A DNA stretch of 64,000 bases from NCBI GenBank assembly GCA_002269645.1, contig NIVC01000536.1, positions 1 to 64,000 of the forward strand, given 5' to 3'. Below are positions 889 to 61,937 of this stretch, in pieces; position 1 is the stretch's first letter; the number at the start of each line of letters is the position of its first letter. The notes under the pieces were generated by a model that was given only the letters and a program-made list of their open reading frames with translations, was not told where the DNA came from and made no database searches. The DNA comes from Macrostomum lignano (lineage: Eukaryota). Both the position numbers and the translations under genes were made by a program.

Positions 889-32753
<31,865 letters not shown>

Positions 32754-34859: not shown

Positions 34860-35455
34860 AATGAGGTAAATGTAGAGTAGTCGGGTAGAAGGAAGTAGAG
34901 TAGCCTCGGTAGAAGAGGGTAGAGTAGACTGGGAAAAAGGGAGTAGAGTAGGGGTAGGAGAGACAGTCGAGTAGTCTGGGAAAAAGGGAGTAGAGTAGTT
35001 TGGGTAGAAGGGAGTAGAGTAGTCTGGGTAGAAGGGAGTAGAGTAGTCTGGGTAGAAGGGAGTAGAGTAGTCTGGGTAGAAGGGAGTAGAGTAGTCTGGG
35101 TAGAAGGGAGTAGAGTAGTCTGGGTAGAAGGGAGTAGAGTAGTCTGGGTAGAAGGGAGCAGAGTAGTCTGGGTAGAAGGAAGCAGAGTAGTCTGGGTAGA
35201 AGGGAGCAGAGTAGTCTGGGTAGAAGGGAGTAGAGTAGTCTGGGTAGAAGGGAGTAGAGTAGTCTGGGTAGAAGGGAGTAGAGTAGTCTGGGTAGAAGGG
35301 AGCAGAGTAGTCTGGGTAGAAGGAAGCAGAGTAGTCTGGGTAGAAGGGAGCAGAGTAGTCTGGGTAGAAGGGAGTAGAGTAGTCTGGGTAGAAGGGAGCA
35401 GAGTAGTCTGGGTAGAAGGGAGTAGAGTAGTCTGGGTAGAAGGGAGTAGAGTAGT
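34860..35455. repeat. 24-bp minisatellite
   Basis: gagtagtctgggtagaagggagta units. Confidence 0.92.
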
Positions 35456-37853: not shown

Positions 37854-37859
37854 TTTATT
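37854..37859 (-). terminator. Polyadenylation signal AATAAA of the secreted-protein gene
   Basis: Canonical hexamer ~38 nt past the stop codon. Confidence 0.65.
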
Positions 37860-37896
37860 CATTTTTATCAAGTGAGCAGACTCATTCAGCTTCTCA

Positions 37897-38964
37897 TTAG
37901 ACTTCGATTGACTTCTGGTGAGGCGTTTCCGACGTCTGGTCAGGCTTGTCCGGCTTCTGGTCGGGCTTGTCCGGCTTCTGGTCGGGCTTGTCCGGCTTCT
38001 GGTCGGGCTTGTCCGGCTTCTGGTCGGGCCTGTCCGGCTTCTGGTCGGGCTTGTCCGGCTTCTGGTCGGGTTTGTCCGGCTTCTGGTCGGGCTTGTCCGG
38101 CTTCTGGTCGGGCTTGTCCGGCTTCTGGTCGGGCTTGTCCGGCTTCTGGTCGGGCTTGTCCGGCTTCTGGTCGGGTTTGTCCGGCTTCTGGTCGGGCTTG
38201 TCCGGCTTCTGGTCAGGCTTCTTAGTTTTCTTAGTCTTGTCATCAAGTTTGCCGATCTTCTTGTTAGCTCGCCTCTTATTAGTGTGATGTTTTCTAAATT
38301 TTCCATACTTTTGATACTTGTTCTGCCTGTACTTTCTGTACTTTCTGTACTTGTCTTGCCTGTACTTTCTGTACTTGTCTTGCCTGTACTTTCTGTACTT
38401 GTCTTGTCTGTACTTTCTGTACTTGTCTTGCCTGTACTTTCTATACTTGTCTTGTCTGTACTTTCTGTACTTGTCTTGTCTGTACTTTCTATACTTGTCT
38501 TGTCTGTACTTTCTGTACTTGTCTTGTCTGTACTTTCTATACTTGTCTTGCCTGTACTTTCTATACTTGTCTTGTCTGTACTTTCTGTATTTGTCTTGTC
38601 TGTACTTTCTGTACTTGTCTTGCCTGTACTTTCTATACTTGTCTTGTCTGTACTTTCTGTACTTGTCTTGTCTGTACTTTCTGTACGGACGGTACCGATT
38701 GTACTTGGTCTTGTTCTGCTTGTCGTGTTCTACAGCCTTTTTGGCGTAATAGCCACGCTCGTCTTTGTGGGCATGCTTGTCGTACTTATAGTAGCGAGCA
38801 TACTCTCGGCCTGCGACGCCACGCCTGCCGCCGTAGTTGTAATTGAAACGCTGGACATCTTTGTTGCGCTCCTTTCCTTGTTGGTCGCCACCGCCGTAGG
38901 CAGCAGCAAACAGAGCCGCTGCGACAAAGAAAATGCACAAACAGTACAGACTGAATCGGGACAT
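37897..38964 (-). CDS. Intronless secreted repetitive protein, 355 aa: signal peptide, ~14x YRQDKYRK, ~13x KPDQKPD
   Basis: ATG start, hydrophobic leader MSRFSLYCLCIFFVAAALFAAAYG; differences between repeat units are almost all synonymous (AGA/AGG, TAC/TAT, AAG/AAA, CCC/CCT); TATA-like box upstream and AATAAA just after the stop. Confidence 0.88.
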   Translation of the reverse strand: MSRFSLYCLCIFFVAAALFAAAYGGGDQQGKERNKDVQRFNYNYGGRRGVAGREYARYYKYDKHAHKDERGYYAKKAVEHDKQNKTKYNRYRPYRKYRQDKYRKYRQDKYRKYRQDKYRKYRQDKYRKYRQDKYRKYRQDKYRKYRQDKYRKYRQDKYRKYRQDKYRKYRQDKYRKYRQDKYRKYRQDKYRKYRQDKYRKYRQDKYRKYRKYRQNKYQKYGKFRKHHTNKRRANKKIGKLDDKTKKTKKPDQKPDKPDQKPDKPDQKPDKPDQKPDKPDQKPDKPDQKPDKPDQKPDKPDQKPDKPDQKPDRPDQKPDKPDQKPDKPDQKPDKPDQKPDKPDQTSETPHQKSIEV

Positions 38965-39013
38965 GGCTGATTAGTTTACTTTATATTTTACAGCTGTTTA
39001 AATTGCGGGCTTA

Positions 39014-39019
39014 CTTATA
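39014..39019 (-). promoter_or_regulatory. Candidate TATA box (caTATAAG) of the secreted-protein gene
   Basis: TATAAG ~50 nt upstream of the ATG at 38964. Confidence 0.4.
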
Positions 39020-39358
39020 TGTGTCGGACGGAATGGGTGAAGGAAAACGACGATTGGTTTTAATCGTAAGCTTGGTCAATTTCTTGTTTGTGAGCGCATA
39101 TATCTGCCAGCCAATCAAATGCGTTCTAGACAACTGGTTTACTTAGATGAGTCATAAACTTCCAAACCCTGAATTTAGGCTTATTGGATGGTTTAACTTG
39201 TGCACGCTTGTTCTGCCCCAACTGAGAGGGGGTGCCATGGGGTGGTGGGTGCGGGCCCAACCCCACCCCAACCTCGGGGGGGTTACTTTTATTACCCTGT
39301 CTATAGTTGGTTTTTTAATCTAATTGATATTCACACGTCAATTCCCACTGCACAGCTC

Positions 39359-39710
39359 AGGGGCCGTGCTATAAAGCTAGGGTGGAGCAAGAATATAAAT
39401 AAGGACCTCAAGTCTGTCCTAAGACGCCTATGAAATAACAATAGCTACTTTTTAACAAATTGTATCACTAATATTATAAAGCTATACCAATGACAAACAA
39501 GTACTGTTACTTAGGCCCATATTGTTTAAATAAGTCTATGTACTTTTAAAAAAAGTATATATTACTCATCAACATTGAAGAGGATGAGGAAGCGGCATTC
39601 AGATTAGATAAAAAACTGGTCACCCAGATCAGAAATTAAAAAAATCAACTTTTGATTGATTTAGGAGTGTCAATCGGTCCTTGAACTCCTAGTTTTATAG
39701 CACGGGCCCC
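39359..39710. mobile_element. Decayed ~350-bp MITE-like element (possibly PIF/Harbinger-type ends)
   Basis: Terminal inverted repeats AGGGGCCGTGCTATAAAGCTAGG versus reverse complement GGGGCCCGTGCTATAAAACTAGG (20/23 match); AT-rich non-coding interior; no clear TSD. Confidence 0.55.
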
Positions 39711-40339
39711 AAGAGAGTAATGTTCGATAGGCTCGTGGATTAGGCCATTATGAGCGCGTGTTCCACTCAGTTCTTCAAATATTTAAGCTTCCCTTTCCTA
39801 GAATGGAATTCCTACATTCTGCTTTGAAAGAGAGAAGAGAGCTTGTGCGCTTCGGAAAGAAGTTTGTTTTTGGTCCAATAATACAGGCCCTTGCTTTCCC
39901 ATTGGTCCAGAACTGGCCCGAGTCCGTGTACTGCACTTTCTATCCGATACAAAATACGATGCCGAGCATCATAAGCGTGGCAGCAAAAGCAGTTGGAAGA
40001 AGAAGCCCAAAGCCCATTGAACCGCAAAATCAAATCAGAGATACAGTGAAGACTGCCTCTATTTATTCCTGTAGATTAAGTGAGCCTCTGTAGTCATGGA
40101 ACTGGGCTAAAATGCATTTTGCTGCTTAATTCAAGCATGCCAGAGTAAAGTAAGGAAATCAGCCATCCACTTTATACTTTATCTGCACGGTAAGCAATTT
40201 AAAGTGTGTTTATACTGGCTAAAAATTTAGAATAATTTTACCAGGTTTATGCAGATCAAGGATATTCTTTATGAGTGGCATGTTGCAGCGTGACCTACTT
40301 TCTACTGAAGTATTGTGGGGTTAGCGCCAGTGCGACGAA

Positions 40340-43099: not shown

Positions 43100-53729
<10,630 letters not shown>

Positions 53730-54329
53730 TGATGGTTGAAATAGTTATCAATATTCCATATTTATGAAAATGATTAAGCATGAACAGTAAAGACATATAC
53801 TAAAGCAAATAGAATTATATATGGCATCGCATACTCTTTCGTATGTGTATAATTTCGCTAGCTAAAAGTGCATTTTCTCTATTTGTCACAAATGTTGCTT
53901 CATCATCAGATAAATACAGGCTTCTCCATGCGTTAGGCTGATTTAGATTGCTTTAATTAGAGAGCAAAGAACGCATTTAAACTGTTTTTTTCCTTGATAT
54001 CACCGAATAATCGGAATGTCCGTCCTCGCTACTGAAAGTAGCGTTTATACAATAAGCTTAGACATGCGCTATTGCACTAAAACTGTCTGTCAGAGACAAA
54101 ATATTTCGCTGCTATTCGCAATAGCACAAAAGTACATTTATTAGGTCGCAGGTAATGGGAATTAAATAGATTTCTGGCGAAAGTAAAAGAGAGTTGGTGA
54201 GCATATCATCTAAATTATTGTGTTATCCTCTGTCATCAGAAGTTTATCATATAGTCATGGCAATGGCTATCGTATTGGGGGGAGTTTATTGACAAAATAG
54301 GGCATTCAATAATCTATATTTTTATTGTG

Positions 54330-55668
54330 TAGTCTAGACAGGGTAGTTTATTATCTAGACAGGGTAGTTTATTATCTAGATTGGGTAGTTTATTATCTAT
54401 ATTGGGTAGTTTATTATCTAGATTGGATAGTTTATGATCTAGATAGGGTAGTTTATGATCTAGATTGGATAGTTTATGATCTAGATTGGATAGTTTATGA
54501 TCTAGATTGGATAGTTTATGATCTAGATTGGATAGTTTATGATCTAGATTGGATAGTTTATGGTCTAGATTGGGCAGTTTATGATCTAGATTGGGTAGTT
54601 TATGATCTAGATAGGGTAGTTTATTATCTAGATTGGATAGTTTATTATCTAGATTGGATAGTTTATGATCTAGATTGGATAGTTTATGATCTAGATTGGA
54701 TAGTTTATGATCTAGATTGGATAGTTTATGATCTAGATTGGATAGTTTATGATCTAGATTGGATAGTTTATGATCTAGATTGGATAGTTTATGATCTAGA
54801 TTGGGCAGTTTATGATCTAGATTGGGTAGTTTATGATCTAGATAGGGTAGTTTATTATCTAGATTGGATAGTTTATGATCTAGATTGGATAGTTTATGAT
54901 CTAGATTTGATAGTTTATGATCTAGATTGGATAGTTTATGATCTAGATTGGATAGTTTATGATCTAGACAGGGTAGTTTATGATCTAGTTTGGGTAGTTT
55001 ATGATCTAGATTGGGAAGTTTATGATCTAGATTGGGTAGTTTATGATCTAGATTGGATAGTTTATGATCTAGATTGGATAGTTTATGATCTAGATTGGAT
55101 AGTTTATGATCTAGATTGGATAGTTTATGATCTAGATTGGATATTTTATGATCTAGATTGGGCAGTTTATGATCTAGATTGGGTAGTTTATGATCTAGAC
55201 AGGTTAGTTTATTATCTAGATTCAATAGTTTATTATCTAGATTGGGTAGTTTATGATCTAGATTAGGTAGTTTATGATCTAGATTGGGTAGTTTATTATC
55301 TATATTGGGTAGTTTATGATCTAGATAGGGTAGTTTATTATCTAGATTGGGTAGTTTATTATCTATATTGGGTAGTTTATGATCTAGATAGGGTAGTTTA
55401 TTATCTAGATTGGATAGTTTATGATCTAGATTGGATAGTTTATGATCTAGATTGGATAGTTTATTATCTATATTGGATAGTTTATGATCTAGATTGGATA
55501 GTTTATGATCTAGACAGGGTAGTTTATGATCTAGTTTGGGTAGTTTATGATCTAGATTGGGTAGTTTATGATCTAGATTGGTTAGTTTATGATCTAGATT
55601 GGGTAGTTTATGATCTAGATTGGGTAGTTTATGATCTAGATTGGGTAGTTTATGATCTAGATTGGGTG
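54330..55668. repeat. 21-bp intergenic minisatellite
   Basis: tttatgatctagattggatag units. Confidence 0.95.
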
Positions 55669-55693
55669 GTTCGTGATAATTTTCATTCATAAA

Positions 55694-55774: not shown

Positions 55775-58700
55775 TCAAGGACTTTTTGAGCAGCTGGGAC
55801 CTGGGCCGCCAGTTCCGCCGCAGCCGCCGCAACCGCTTCCTCCGGAAGCCACCGTCTTGCCGAGTTCCGAGAGCTTCTGCTGCAGTTCCGCTTCGATCAG
55901 CCGGGTCTCCTGATGATGCAGATTGTTTGCGGAAATCGCTACTGGATTTCAGATAAAAACTTTTGGATATTCTTCAACTCCCAAGTACTGAATCCCAAAT
56001 ATAAAAATCCCGAAATCTGGATTCCGAATCCCCAAATCCCAAATCTTGGATTCCAACTCCCCAAATCCCAAAATCTGGATCCCAAATCCCCAAATCCCAA
56101 ATTTTGGATCCCAAATCCCCAAATCCCAAATTTTGGATCCCAAATCCCCAAATCCTAAATTTTGGATCCCAAATCCCCAAATCCCAAAATCTGGTTCCCA
56201 AATCACCAAATCCCAAAACCTTGATCCTGAATCCGCAAGCCCCAAAATCTGAATCTCAACTCCCTAAATCTCAAAAATCTTGATCCCCAATCTCCAAATC
56301 CCAAATCCCAAATTTAGGATCACAAATCCCCAAATTCAAAATTCTAGATCCGAAATCCCGAAATCTGGATCCCAACTCCTCCAATCCTAAAATCTGGATC
56401 CCGAATCCCAAATCCCCAAACGCTAAATGCCCCATCCATATACCCGACCTCGAATCCAAGCCGCCATCAACGAACCTCAGCGTAGGCCGCCTCGATCTCA
56501 AGGCCCAGCCGGTCCCGCTGCTCCTTTAGCGCCTTCAGCTGCCTGGAGTGCTGGGAGTCCAGGGCCTGCAGCTCAGTCACCGCGGCCACAATCTGCCGCT
56601 GCTGAAAGTCCCGCCTGGCCTCGCGCAGCTCCTCGGCGCGGTCCTGCAATCGGTGTGCCAACTGGCGCGCCTCGGCGCTTCTCTGGCGCTCGCGAGTTCG
56701 CTTGAGCTGCGCCCGCTCGGCCGAGTGGCCGGCCTCCAGCCTCTGCCGGGCCGCCGACTCCGCCGAAGCCAGCGCTGCGGCCAGGGCGTCCCGGCGCTGG
56801 GCGGAGAATTTCAAGCGCATTGCGGACTCGGCGCAAGCTTGGGCGTCCAGCTGACTGCGGACCTCCGCCTCCTGGCTGGCCGACAGCTGGCAGGCCTGGG
56901 GTTCGGTTCGAGTTTGGGGTTGGCGTGTTTGGGGTTGGTGCGTTTCGGGTTGGCGTGTTTGGGGTTGGCGTGTTTGGGGTTGGCGTGTTTGGGGTTGGCG
57001 TGTTTGGGGTTGGCGTGTTTGGGGTTGGCGTGTTTGGGGTTGGTGTGTTTGGGGTTGGCGTGTTTGGGGTTGGTGTGTTTGGGGTTGGTGCGTTTGAGGT
57101 TGGCGTATTTGGGGATGGCGTGTTTGGGATTGGCGTGTTTGAGGTTGGCGTGTTTGGGGTTGGCGTGTTTGGGGATGGCGTGTTTGGGGTTGGTGCGTTT
57201 GGAGTTGGTGTGTTTGGGGTTGGTGTGTTTGGGGTTGGTTGGCGTGTTTGGGGTCGGCGTGTTTGGGGTTGGTGTGTTTGTGGTTGGCGTTTTTGGGGTT
57301 GGTTGGCGTGTTTGGGGTTGGTGTGTTTGGGGTTGGTGTGTTTGGGGTTGGTGTGTTTGGGGTTGGTTGGCGTGTTTGAGGTTGGCGTGTTTGGGGGTTG
57401 GCGTGTTTGGGGTTGACACACAGCGATCCCAGCAAACCGGGAAAGCTTGAATTCCTCACTTTGCGCCCGAAGTCCCTCTCGGACGCGCAGCGCACAGCTT
57501 CCGGCTGCTCTGGCTCGCTCGGCTCGTCTCGACGCCGCAGCGACCAGGTGGCCAGCTTCTTCTTAGCCGAGGTCCCGGACTCGAGTCGGGCCAGGGCAAC
57601 CCGGTGTTTGGTGCGCAGGCTGATCAGAGCCTTGAAGAAATTCATATTCGGGCTAATAGCGCTGCACTACTTGTAGTGGTCAGTAAAGCAAATTGCAACA
57701 AAACTTTATGCGCTTACCTTCTGATTCTGTTTAAGCATTGATTGCGTCTCTTTTTCCTCTTTCTGCAACAATTTCTGGTACTTCTTGTCTCTCCTGAGCT
57801 CATCCAGAGGCATCAGCTGCGTGGCGGGATCTGCTTGCGGGTGGAAGCAGACCGGGTCAGGATTTTTGGCTCGTACTTGATGGGAGAGGTAGCCGTGCGG
57901 AGGGGCTCAAGGTCCCGGGTTCGAATTAAGTCAAGCCCATGACACCCATGAGGGTGTCGGCAAACGTTTTACCTCAGAGCCAGATAAAGAATGTAAAGAG
58001 CATTACTGCGGGCCAGATGAGAGAAGAGGGAATAGAGGAGAGAGAGAAGAGACGAAAGGTGAGAGATGCAAGGAGAGAAGAGGAGAGGAGAGATGCGAGA
58101 AGGGAGGAGAGGCGCGGGGAGGGGAGTAGATAGAGGAGAGGAGAGGAAGAGAGAGATGAGAGAGAGGAGAGATAAGAGGAGAGAAAAGAGAGAAAAGGGG
58201 GAAAGAGAACTGAGAAGAGACAAACCTTGAGCGGGCCGGATTGCTATTGTGAAATTTCAAAGGACCCGAGGGCCGGATAGAGAGGCTTCGCGAGCCTGAG
58301 TCTGCCGTCCCCCTATTTAGAGGAATATGGCTATTCTGTACACAGATGAAACACTCGCAACGCCTGTAAACTATATTGAAAGTATCAATTACACGTACAT
58401 CCTACTGATGAGTAGCATGTTCAATTTAAAACCTGCTCACCTAAGTTGCTCGATGTTGCAGAGGTTGCAGTCGCAGCAGAGGCAGCTGAAGCGGTTGGAG
58501 GTTCAACAGGTGCAGTGCCAGCTGGTGACACCTCAGTGTGGTTCCTGCTAGCGTTTGATTTTATTGAGCTAGATAGACTGGGCTGTTGCAGACTCTGCTG
58601 CTGCTGCTGTTGTTGTTGAACAGGTCGATTTGCTTTAGCAGCCGCAGCTGCCTGGCTGGATGGAACACCTGAAGTCTGAGCTCCATTTTCGCTGGCTGAG

Positions 58701-61214: not shown

Positions 61215-61937
61215 CTTGGGATCTTGGGATCTTGGGATCTTGGGATCTGGGATCTTGGGATCTGGGATCTTGGGATCTGGGATCTTGGGATCTAGGATCT
61301 TGGCATCTGGGATCTTGGGATCTGGGATCTTGGGATCTGGGATCTTGGGATCTGGGATCTTGGGATCTGGGATCTTGGGATCTGGGATCTTGGGATATGG
61401 GATCTTGGGATATGGGATCTTGGGATATGGGATCTTGGGATATGGGATCTTGGGATATGGGATCTTGGGATATGGGATCTTGGGATATGGGATCTTGGGA
61501 TATGGGATCTTGGGATATGGGATCTTGGGATATGGGATCTTGGGATATGGGATCTTGGGATATGGGATCTTGGGATATGGGATCTTGGGATATGGGATCT
61601 TGGGATATGGGATCTTGGGATATGGGATCTTGGGATATGGGATCTTGGGATATGGGATCTTGGGATATGGGATCTTGGGATATGGGATCTTGGGATATGG
61701 GATCTTGGGATATGGGATCTTGGGATCTGGGATCTTGGGATATGGGATCTTGGGATATGGGATCTTGGGATATGGGATCTTGGGATATGGGATCTTGGGA
61801 TATGGGATCTTGGGATATGGGATCTTGGGATATGGGATCTTGGGATATGGGATCTTGGGATATGGGATCTTGGGATCTGGGATCTTGGGATCTGGGATCT
61901 TGGGATCTGGGATCTTGGGATCTGGGATCTTGGGATC
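61215..61937. repeat. 15-bp minisatellite
   Basis: gggatcttgggatat / gggatcttgggatct units. Confidence 0.95.

What the first reader, a model, noticed from the sequence alone, without database searches (positions are those of the whole stretch)
37854..39019. Orphan secreted block-copolymer protein: Tyr/Lys/Arg octapeptide block plus Lys-Pro-Asp-Gln block (candidate adhesive, cement or eggshell protein)
Seen: a compact intronless gene with TATA-like box, signal peptide and AATAAA. After a short Y/K/R-rich leader come ~14 YRQDKYRK units (25% Tyr, 50% Lys+Arg, each Tyr next to a cation) and ~13 charge-neutral KPDQKPD units. Unlike the other tandem arrays examined here, unit variation is nearly all synonymous (AGA/AGG, TAC/TAT, AAG/AAA, CCC/CCT; one K>R), which points to selection on the peptide. 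Established: Tyr(DOPA)-cation adjacency is the design of mussel foot proteins Mfp-3/Mfp-5, and Tyr-rich precursors form quinone-tanned flatworm eggshells. Inference: an undescribed biomaterial protein (glue, eggshell, rhabdite or seminal-fluid secretion). The RK pairs and an N-terminal GGRR also allow a propeptide reading.
Basis: partly seen in the sequence, partly recalled or inferred. Interest (0 to 1): 0.82.

Follow-up and report, generated by a model that had tools for sequence, protein, structure and literature searches.

The report
Orphan secreted Tyr/Lys/Arg repeat protein gene
A small, stand-alone animal gene very probably encodes a secreted, strongly positively charged protein made of two near-perfect peptide repeats. 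It looks like a glue, coating or eggshell component, but nothing here shows that it is expressed or what it does.

Summary
On the minus strand, 38964..37897 is an uninterrupted 355-codon ORF. It encodes a signal-peptide-like N-terminus, a Tyr/Gly/Lys/His/Asp-rich leader, 14 perfect YRQDKYRK units, a basic linker, 13 KPDQKPD units and a short tail. TATAAG lies 55 nt before the ATG and AATAAA 37 nt after the stop.

ORF length is no evidence, because both arrays are open in all six frames and 38% of the window is minisatellite. Three other lines support a real gene:
- Codon usage of the non-repeat N-terminus matches neighbouring exons only in this frame (+24 bits, top 0.7% of windows).
- It is the only one of 131 ATG-ORFs with a signal-peptide-like start.
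- The promoter and polyA motifs sit where a gene would need them.

The "synonymous-only variation" is real but rests on 5-7 variable columns (p about 0.02-0.05), and non-coding arrays nearby can mimic it.

No homologue of the non-repeat part was found, and there is no Pfam family, including the trematode eggshell domain. All database hits are periodic low-complexity artefacts.

The function is inferred from composition only. The mature protein carries net +69, has no Cys and is 13% Tyr, nearly always beside Lys/Arg. My best guess is a cohesive, possibly cross-linkable component of an extracellular secretion. Expression, tissue, species and DOPA modification could not be tested.

The parts
39053..39057 (-). 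CCAAT motif, about 90 nt upstream of the ATG
   Evidence: Read directly from the minus strand. Motif only; function not tested.
39014..39019 (-). TATA-like box TATAAG, 55 nt upstream of the ATG. No ATG lies between it and the start codon.
   Evidence: Read directly from the sequence. Placement fits a short (about 25 nt) 5' UTR. Inferred, not shown.
38899..38964 (-). Start codon in GCCATG context, plus the signal-peptide-like segment aa 1-22 (MSRFSLYCLCIFFVAAALFAAA; A-A-A before Tyr23)
   Evidence: Hydropathy profile and small residues at -3/-1. It is the only 1 of 131 ATG-ORFs >=60 aa in the window to pass a simple rule-based signal-peptide test. AF2 models aa 3-23 as a helix. SignalP was not available.
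38686..38898 (-). Non-repetitive mature leader, aa 23-93: Tyr 15.5%, K+R 27%, with Gly/His/Asp, the GGRR motif and one N-K-T sequon
   Evidence: Codon-usage log-odds for aa 1-92 is +24.1 bits in this frame, against -2.5 or lower in the other five; the leader taken without the signal peptide scores +19.4 against at most +6.2. The full region is in the top 0.7% of all window positions and frames. Arg is encoded here by CGN codons, against AGA/AGG in the array. No homologue found.
38317..38685 (-). Block A, aa 94-216: 14 identical YRQDKYRK units (38676..38341) flanked by decayed units. Net +48, 25% Tyr, 50% Lys+Arg.
   Evidence: TRF period 24, 14.7 copies, 94%. Unit table. Charge and composition. 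AF2 single-sequence model puts aa 70-237 in one helix with pLDDT >90, which is weak evidence.
38221..38316 (-). Basic linker, aa 217-248 (YQKYGKFRKHHTNKRRANKKIGKLDDKTKKTK), net +12
   Evidence: Its codon score is uninformative.
37936..38220 (-). Block B, aa 249-343: 13 KPDQKPD units (one RPDQKPD) plus a partial unit. Net charge 0, with Pro every 3-4 residues.
   Evidence: TRF period 21, 14.7 copies, 95%. Unit table. Charge. AF2 gives coil with pLDDT about 57. PDB hits are only to the RNA polymerase II CTD heptads, a periodicity artefact.
37897..37935 (-). Decayed last unit and C-terminal tail (TSETPHQKSIEV), plus the TAA stop
37854..37859 (-). AATAAA polyadenylation-signal motif, 37 nt after the stop codon
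   Evidence: Read directly from the sequence. Use as a polyA signal is not shown.

Best explanation
This is a stand-alone, intronless gene on the minus strand (about 39000 to about 37835). It lies in a minisatellite-filled gap between a teneurin gene and a RasGEF-type gene.

Shown from sequence: it encodes a 355-aa precursor. Cleavage after the AAA at residue 22 would leave a 333-aa, 42-kDa mature protein that is Cys-free, extremely hydrophilic, has pI about 10 and net charge +69. It has two blocks:
- Block A is a polycationic Tyr block: 14 x YRQDKYRK, +3 per unit, with every Tyr carrying Lys/Arg at i+-1 and i+-4.
- Block B is a charge-neutral, Pro-rich block: 13 x KPDQKPD.

Inferred:
- The protein is exported and acts as a component of an extracellular secretion, such as an adhesive or cement, an egg covering, mucus or rhabdite-type granules, or reproductive fluid.
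- Block A would provide cohesion. It could bind polyanionic partners (acidic glycans or proteins) electrostatically, and use Tyr-cation (cation-pi) contacts that allow condensation or coacervation at high salt.
- Block A could be hardened further if a tyrosinase oxidises its Tyr next to Lys.
- Block B would be a hydrated, extended, non-sticky spacer.
For: Evidence that the gene is real:
- Frame-specific codon usage in the non-repeat part: +24 bits, with the other five frames at -2.5 or lower. This is in the top 0.7% of the window.
- GC3 is 0.63-0.70 against GC2 0.31-0.38, like the neighbouring exons.
- It is the only signal-peptide-like ORF of 131.
- TATAAG at -55, GCCATG start context, an in-frame upstream stop and AATAAA at +37.

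Evidence that the composition is a property of the protein and not only of the arrays:
- The non-repeat leader is also Tyr/Lys/Arg/Asp-rich, but uses different codons: CGN for Arg against AGA/AGG.
- Variable columns in the arrays are 5 synonymous to 1-2 non-synonymous.

Physical chemistry: net +69, no Cys, Tyr 13.2%, 38/44 Tyr next to K/R, block B neutral.

Precedents:
- Cationic Lys/Arg repeat regions of Mlig-ap1 give cohesion in flatworm glue and are blocked by heparin (PMC6410801).
- Cationic Tyr/Lys repeat protein Rmfp-1 coacervates through cation-pi contacts at seawater salt (PMC12721214).
- Flatworm eggshell precursors are Cys-free with 12-15% Tyr, cross-linked through DOPA-quinone to Lys (PMC11727788; PMC2758302).
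Against: - No transcript, protein or tissue evidence of any kind.
- The species is unknown, so the flatworm precedents may not apply.
- There is no homology to any adhesive or eggshell family, and the TES domain is absent.
- Tyr is followed by Gly in only 3 of 44 cases. Trematode precursors typically have Tyr-Gly (PMC2758302).
- The repeats may be young, neutral minisatellite expansions in a genome where 38% of this window is tandem array.
- The hydrophobic segment is long (about 19 residues) and could be a signal anchor rather than a cleaved signal peptide.
- The AF2 helix comes from a single sequence and is unreliable.
Confidence: 0.45

Rival explanations
1. This is a real small secreted-protein gene, but its block architecture is a by-product. 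Two in-frame minisatellites (24 bp and 21 bp) expanded recently inside it, as they do everywhere in this genome. They are tolerated because they encode harmless hydrophilic sequence. On this view the repeats carry no designed function, and the repeat number is probably polymorphic.
For: - 42 arrays cover 37.6% of the window.
- The coding arrays are as homogeneous (94-95%) as the non-coding ones.
- Both arrays are open in all six frames.
- The synonymous excess is only p about 0.02-0.05, and non-coding arrays can mimic it in their best frame.
- The last unit of block B has decayed by non-synonymous changes.
- Another ORF in the window (56467..57645, -) also carries an in-frame array.
Against: - The non-repeat leader already has the same Tyr/basic/Asp composition, encoded with different codons. 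The expansions therefore amplified a pre-existing protein character.
- All 3 variable columns of block A are third-position synonymous.
- Both neighbouring arrays have periods divisible by 3 and are in phase with the signal peptide.
Confidence: 0.2
2. It is not a functional gene. The ORF is a chance or very young one, created by two period-3n minisatellites next to a short open stretch. It would be untranscribed or untranslated.
For: - ORF length is uninformative here: the arrays are open in six frames, and an antisense 350-aa ORF is also open.
- No homologue anywhere.
- No transcript evidence could be obtained.
- The linker has no codon-usage signal.
Against: Four independent features coincide:
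- A signal-peptide-like start (1/131).
- Frame-specific codon usage (top 0.7%).
- TATAAG at -55 and AATAAA at +37.
- A good start-codon context with an upstream in-frame stop.
By rough motif frequencies, the promoter and polyA placement alone would arise by chance at well under 1% (my estimate, not a tool result).
Confidence: 0.15
3. It is a multi-copy peptide precursor. Convertases cut at the dibasic R-K of each unit, releasing about 14 copies of YRQDKY. Cleavage at GGRR (aa 45-48) would release an amidated N-terminal peptide. Block B would be a spacer.
For: Signal peptide, one G-R-R site, and 24 overlapping dibasic pairs in the mature chain (13 of them the R-K between the 14 units). Multi-copy precursors of identical short peptides are a known design (general knowledge).
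Against: - The repeat sites are R-K, not the preferred K-R or R-R, and lack a Gly for amidation.
- The released peptide would itself contain K and R.
- A 95-residue Pro-rich neutral block and net +69 are unlike known prohormones.
- No similarity to any peptide family.
Confidence: 0.07
4. It is a rapidly evolving reproductive secretion (seminal fluid or a female-tract protein). It would act on the partner or on gametes through its polycationic block, rather than as a structural material.
For: In Macrostomum, 38 of 65 prostate-limited proteins have signal peptides, and 31 of 76 transcripts have no BLAST hit (PMC5977470). Orphan status and repetitiveness fit fast-evolving reproductive genes.
Against: The species is unverified. 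No sequence match in the supplements of the seminal-fluid and positional RNA-seq papers. Composition alone cannot separate this reading from the material one.
Confidence: 0.13

Closest known systems
Mussel foot proteins (Mfp-1 decapeptide repeats; Mfp-3/Mfp-5 Tyr/DOPA-Lys adjacency)
   Same: Secreted, cationic, Tyr-rich, with cation and aromatic residues side by side. Mfp-1 is likewise a long tandem array of a short Tyr/Lys/Pro peptide. Cation-pi-driven coacervation of recombinant Mfp-1 at seawater salt is documented (PMC12721214).
   Different: No sequence homology. Here Arg equals Lys, and Asp/Gln are built into the unit. Tyr and Pro are segregated into two separate blocks instead of being mixed. 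There is no Gly-rich context. DOPA and Hyp modification are unknown.
Trematode eggshell (vitelline) precursor proteins: vpB/TES-domain family, p14, p48
   Same: Secreted, Cys-free in the mature chain, 12-15% Tyr with abundant Lys/Asp/His (PMC11727788). This is the chemistry needed for quinone tanning of Tyr to Lys (PMC2758302). The leader motif YYKYDKHAHKDERGYY has the same flavour.
   Different: No TES domain: Pfam empty at E<=1. Tyr is rarely followed by Gly (3/44). Net charge is far higher. It has long perfect tandem arrays and a Pro-rich neutral block.
Mlig-ap1 KR-regions (cohesive protein of Macrostomum lignano temporary glue)
   Same: Secreted, with an extremely Lys/Arg-rich repetitive region and no homologues outside the lineage. 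Cohesion is by charge and is inhibited by polyanions (PMC6410801).
   Different: Mlig-ap1 has more than 3,600 residues of KR-regions plus C-type lectin, vWD/C8/TIL and EGF domains, and its KR-regions have pI >14. The paper does not mention tyrosine at all (0 occurrences). The protein here has 355 aa, no domains, and Tyr as every fourth residue of its cationic block.
Charged single alpha-helix (ER/K) domains and Pro-rich heptad spacers such as the RNA polymerase II CTD
   Same: AF2 models block A as one ~170-residue helix, and D-to-K i+4 pairs exist. Block B shares the xPxxxPx heptad spacing with the CTD, which is why it aligns with it.
   Different: Block A has no Glu and a 4:1 excess of cations, unlike the balanced ER/K helices. 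The CTD match is periodicity only, not homology.

Membership tests
Trematode eggshell synthesis (TES, vitelline protein B) family | TES domain (IPR012615 / Pfam TES) | tested here: not met
   hmmscan against Pfam-A at E<=1 returned no family. The domain is named as the family's defining feature in PMC11727788.
Trematode eggshell synthesis (TES, vitelline protein B) family | About 12-15% Tyr and no Cys in the mature protein | tested here: met
   Mature chain has 13.2% Tyr and 0 Cys. Reference values from PMC11727788. This is composition only and not specific.
Trematode eggshell precursors (p14/p19/p48) | Tyr frequently flanked by Gly on the carboxy side | tested here: not met
   Only 3 of 44 mature Tyr are followed by Gly, read from the sequence. 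Criterion from PMC2758302.
Trematode eggshell precursors | Expression in vitelline cells or oocyte shell granules, and Tyr to DOPA conversion | not testable with these tools
   No transcriptome or proteome of the source animal is available.
Mussel foot protein-like adhesive proteins | Tyr/DOPA adjacent to Lys/Arg in a cationic secreted protein | tested here: met
   38/44 Tyr have K/R at +-1, net charge is +69, and the start is signal-peptide-like. This is a functional analogy, not homology.
Mussel foot protein-like adhesive proteins | Sequence homology to an Mfp family, and DOPA modification | tested here: inconclusive
   No hit outside repeat-periodicity matches in 1.84 billion representatives. 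The coverage of molluscan proteins in that library is unknown. DOPA is not testable.
Mlig-ap1-type flatworm cohesive protein | Large multidomain protein (C-type lectin, vWD/C8/TIL, EGF) flanked by KR-regions | tested here: not met
   355 aa, no Pfam domain. Architecture from PMC6410801.
Neuropeptide / prohormone precursor | Signal peptide plus repeated peptides bounded by K-R or R-R sites, usually with Gly for amidation | tested here: not met
   Unit boundaries are R-K without Gly. Only one G-R-R site, at aa 46-48.
ER/K single alpha-helix domain | Alternating Glu and Lys/Arg with near-zero net charge | tested here: not met
   Block A has no Glu, 12% Asp, 50% K+R and net +48. The predicted helix is from single-sequence AF2 only.

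The most novel reading that the evidence does not exclude
This could be an undescribed type of invertebrate biomaterial protein: a natural diblock polyelectrolyte. A rigid (possibly helical) brush of Tyr surrounded by Lys/Arg on all sides would drive DOPA-independent cation-pi and electrostatic condensation or adhesion. A neutral Lys-Pro-Asp-Gln polyproline-type block would control spacing or hydration. It would have evolved de novo by in-frame minisatellite expansion in a minisatellite-prone genome.
Probability: 0.15. Interest if true: 0.7.

Novelty: new member of a known kind. Interest (0 to 1): 0.4.

Why it matters
If it is expressed in an adhesive, cement, shell or mucus gland, it would be a very small and simple natural example of a Tyr-cation cohesive block fused to a neutral spacer. 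It would be easy to make recombinantly and to copy in synthetic underwater adhesives or coatings.

It would also show how a minisatellite-prone genome builds new secreted material proteins from in-frame repeat expansion.

If it is not expressed, it is a caution. In such genomes long, clean, 'designed-looking' repeat ORFs arise readily.

Tried and rejected
- **Homology searches.** The full protein against 5.8 billion clusters gave only bacterial KPD-type low-complexity hits. Exhaustive HMMER against 1.84 billion representatives gave 790 hits. All 150 listed hits match one repeat block or span block boundaries; none starts before residue 58 of the query. The ones I inspected were unrelated periodic sequences, many of them minisatellite translations. 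The N-terminal 96 aa alone gave nothing. An exact-product look-up found nothing on record.
- **Metagenome scans.** Neither the peptide patterns nor the 32-nt repeat DNA found anything.
- **PDB.** Only the RNA polymerase II CTD heptads matched, rejected as a periodicity artefact.
- **Rfam on the window.** Nothing.
- **Species identification.** A teneurin exon hit only distant (27% identity or less) unnamed or bacterial NHL-repeat proteins, so that collection does not identify the source animal or show a close relative; its metazoan coverage is unknown. The PDB comparison places the animal nearest Drosophila Ten-m, but distantly. A spliced-leader sequence that I recalled from memory for Macrostomum was not in the window, which is uninformative.
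- **Literature.** No paper contains the peptide strings. The supplements of two Macrostomum expression screens contain neither the peptide nor the DNA repeats.
- **Possible head-to-head paralogue.** A 21-nt inverted match of the 5' leader at 40146-40166 has no ATG and no ORF, so I rejected it as chance. tblastn found no paralogue in the window.
- **Structure search.** I did not search the AF2 model against structure libraries, because a single long helix plus coil gives meaningless matches.
Full report
**What is there.** The finding's coordinates (37854-39019) delimit a compact unit on the minus strand. Reading that strand gives, in order:
- CCAAT at 39057..39053 and TATAAG at 39019..39014.
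- No ATG until GCC-ATG at 38964, which is preceded by an in-frame TAA 9 nt upstream.
- An uninterrupted ORF of 355 codons, ending in TAA at 37899..37897.
- AATAAA at 37859..37854, 37 nt after the stop.

Tandem Repeats Finder reports two arrays inside the ORF. One has period 24 at 38335-38686 (14.7 copies, 94% matches). The other has period 21 at 37912-38220 (14.7 copies, 95%).

In codon register the protein reads:
- A signal-peptide-like segment (aa 1-22).
- A non-repetitive leader rich in Tyr, Gly, Lys, Arg, His and Asp (aa 23-93).
- 14 identical YRQDKYRK units (aa 97-208) with decayed units on both sides.
- A basic linker (aa 217-248).
- 13 KPDQKPD units, one of them RPDQKPD (aa 249-339).
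- A decayed unit and a short tail.

**Is it more than chance?** This needed care, because the window is extraordinary. TRF finds 42 separate arrays covering 37.6% of the 64 kb. Many of them generate ORFs of several hundred codons in several frames. Both arrays of the candidate are open in all six frames, and an antisense ORF of 350 codons is also open. ORF length is therefore worthless as evidence here.

I used four tests that do not depend on the repeats.
1. **Codon usage.** I trained a codon-usage log-odds model on the neighbouring exons that Pfam confirms as teneurin and RasGEF. It scores the non-repeat N-terminal 276 nt at +24.1 bits in the proposed frame, against -2.5 or lower in the other five. 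That value is in the top 0.7% of all positions and frames outside known exons, a background that still contains unannotated exons. GC3 (0.63-0.70) exceeds GC2 (0.31-0.38), as in the neighbours (GC3 0.73-0.86).
2. **Signal peptide.** A simple rule-based test asked for a basic n-region, an uncharged hydrophobic run of at least 10 residues starting within 8 residues, and small residues at -3/-1. Exactly one of 131 ATG-initiated ORFs of 60 aa or more in the window passes, and it is this one.
3. **Promoter and polyA motifs.** TATAAG and AATAAA sit where a promoter and a polyA signal should.
4. **Composition beyond the arrays.** The leader outside the arrays has the same unusual composition (Tyr 15.5%, K+R 27%). 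It encodes Arg with CGN codons, whereas the array uses AGA/AGG. The Tyr/basic character is therefore a property of the protein, not just of one expanded 24-mer.

Together these make a real gene likely; I put it near 0.8. No transcript evidence could be obtained.

**The 'synonymous variation' argument.** The fact is correct, but its weight is limited.
- Block A has only three variable columns, all third-position transitions (11 unit-level differences).
- Block B has two synonymous columns, one K>R, and a K>T at the decaying edge.
- One third of possible transitions in these consensus units are synonymous. Five of six or seven columns being synonymous in a frame fixed beforehand by the ATG therefore gives p of about 0.02-0.05.
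- As a control I scored every array in the window with a period divisible by three. Non-coding arrays can look just as 'synonymous' in their best of six frames: 61217-61936 gives 17:1 and 34872-35455 gives 11:2.
- The long ATG-ORF made by the 21-bp array at 54333-55671 shows the opposite pattern, 8 synonymous to 69 non-synonymous.
- The coding arrays are no more homogeneous than their non-coding neighbours.

Recent expansion or concerted evolution therefore explains the perfect units as well as purifying selection does.

**What the protein is like.**

| Segment | Properties |
|---|---|
| Mature chain | 333 aa, 42.4 kDa, pI 10.1, net +69, GRAVY -2.8, no Cys, 13.2% Tyr, one N-K-T sequon |
| Block A | net +48; 25% Tyr, 50% Lys+Arg |
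| Block B | net charge exactly zero; Pro every 3-4 residues |

In block A the 8-residue spacing puts a cation at i+-1 and i+-4 of every Tyr. Overall, 38 of 44 Tyr have K/R next to them.

AlphaFold2 on the single sequence models aa 70-237 as one continuous helix (pLDDT >90) and block B as coil (pLDDT about 57). Single-sequence predictions of charged low-complexity sequence over-predict helices, so I treat this as weak evidence.

**Relatives.** None were found.
- Pfam is empty at E<=1. That excludes the trematode eggshell synthesis domain that defines vitelline protein B-type precursors (PMC11727788).
- The 5.8-billion-cluster search gave only bacterial KPD-type low-complexity hits.
- The exhaustive search of 1.84 billion representatives gave 790 hits. 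Every listed hit is confined to the repeat blocks or the linker between them; none starts before residue 58 of the query. The examples I read were unrelated periodic sequences.
- The N-terminal 96 residues alone hit nothing. Metagenome scans hit nothing.
- PDB matches are the RNA polymerase II CTD heptads, which share only proline spacing.
- A caveat applies. A teneurin exon from the window found nothing closer than 27% identity in the same collection. So neither the source animal's own proteins nor those of any close relative were found there. 'Orphan' is established only against what was searchable.

**Context and organism.**
- On the plus strand, teneurin exons run from about 5514 to 31743: EGF, TTR, FN-plug, NHL and YD-shell.
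- A RasGEF-domain gene starts after 45504.
- The candidate sits alone, on the opposite strand, in the minisatellite-filled gap between them.
- The teneurin NHL exon is closest to Drosophila Ten-m (8e-57) and next to vertebrate teneurins (about 1e-44). The animal is therefore a metazoan that is neither a vertebrate nor close to insects.
- I could not confirm a flatworm. The published Macrostomum lignano genome has 15% simple and tandem repeats (PMC5730564), which is compatible but not diagnostic.

**How it most likely works.** This is inference. The protein is a secreted, Cys-free polycation whose aromatic residues are all flanked by cations, joined to a neutral proline-rich block. It looks like a component of an extracellular secretion in which block A supplies cohesion and block B supplies a hydrated spacer. 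Three documented systems work this way:
- The Lys/Arg-rich regions of Mlig-ap1 hold flatworm glue together by charge and are blocked by heparin (PMC6410801).
- Cationic Tyr/Lys repeat protein Rmfp-1 coacervates by cation-pi contacts once seawater salt screens the charge (PMC12721214).
- Flatworm egg coverings harden by oxidation of Tyr to DOPA-quinone, which reacts with Lys (PMC2758302; PMC5544531).

The protein fails the membership tests for each family: no TES domain, Tyr-Gly rare, and none of the Mlig-ap1 domains. These are analogies of mechanism, not classifications.

Rivals remain open:
- The repeats may be neutral expansions in a small secreted protein.
- The ORF may be unexpressed.
- It may be a fast-evolving reproductive secretion.
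- Least likely, it may be a multi-copy peptide precursor. Its R-K sites lack Gly, and there is only one GRR site.

**Verdict.** The gene is probable, secretion is probable, and function is unknown beyond its physical chemistry.

It is a reasonable candidate for an in situ or proteomic check in the source animal. It is less remarkable than first scored, for three reasons:
- The selection argument is weak.
- This genome manufactures clean repeat ORFs in abundance.
- Orphan, repetitive, secreted proteins are common in invertebrate gland transcriptomes.

Interest 0.4.

Noticed in passing
window 1-64000: Extreme minisatellite density. TRF finds 42 separate arrays (periods 2-33 bp) covering 37.6% of the window, mostly inside introns and intergenic DNA. 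16 of the 42 have periods divisible by 3. Many create ORFs of several hundred codons in several frames.
   Followed up: partly
window 5514-6014, 14355-15125, 17099-18937, 29243-30127, 30349-31743 (+): Exons of a teneurin gene with EGF, TTR-like, FN-plug, NHL and YD-shell domains by Pfam. The NHL exon is closest to Drosophila Ten-m among solved structures (8e-57). The introns are packed with minisatellites.
   Followed up: partly
window 45504-47871 and 51898-52488 (+): Exons of a RasGEF-domain gene (Pfam RasGEF, 3e-13, in the last piece). It has acidic and poly-Ala/poly-Gly tracts. A 16-bp array (46240-46546) interrupts the long ORF.
   Followed up: no
window 56467-57645 (-): A 392-aa ATG-ORF with a coiled-coil-like Arg/Glu/Gln/Ala-rich C-terminal part and moderately high codon-usage scores. 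It runs straight through a 15-bp minisatellite (56912-57415, encoding PQTRQ-type units). This is possibly a second case of an in-frame array in a coding exon. No Pfam hit.
   Followed up: no
window 54314-55690 (-): A 458-aa ATG-ORF made almost entirely of a 21-bp array (HKLPNLD units). Unit variation is overwhelmingly non-synonymous (8 synonymous to 69 non-synonymous) and it has no signal peptide. I used it as a non-coding control. It shows how easily long ORFs arise here.
   Followed up: yes
window 49981-51036 (+): A 351-aa ATG-ORF produced by an AGAGG pentanucleotide array, translated as (ERRGE)n. Probably non-coding.
   Followed up: no
window 39225-39290 and 39360-39381 / 39688-39709: A G-run/C-run segment of palindromic character lies about 270 nt upstream of the candidate's ATG. 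Further upstream is a 22-nt inverted repeat (91% complementary, arms 306 nt apart), possibly a small foldback or MITE-like element.
   Followed up: no
window 40146-40166 (+): A 21-nt, 86% reverse-complement match to the candidate's 5' leader plus ATG suggested a head-to-head paralogue. The site has no ATG and no ORF, so it is a chance match.
   Followed up: yes
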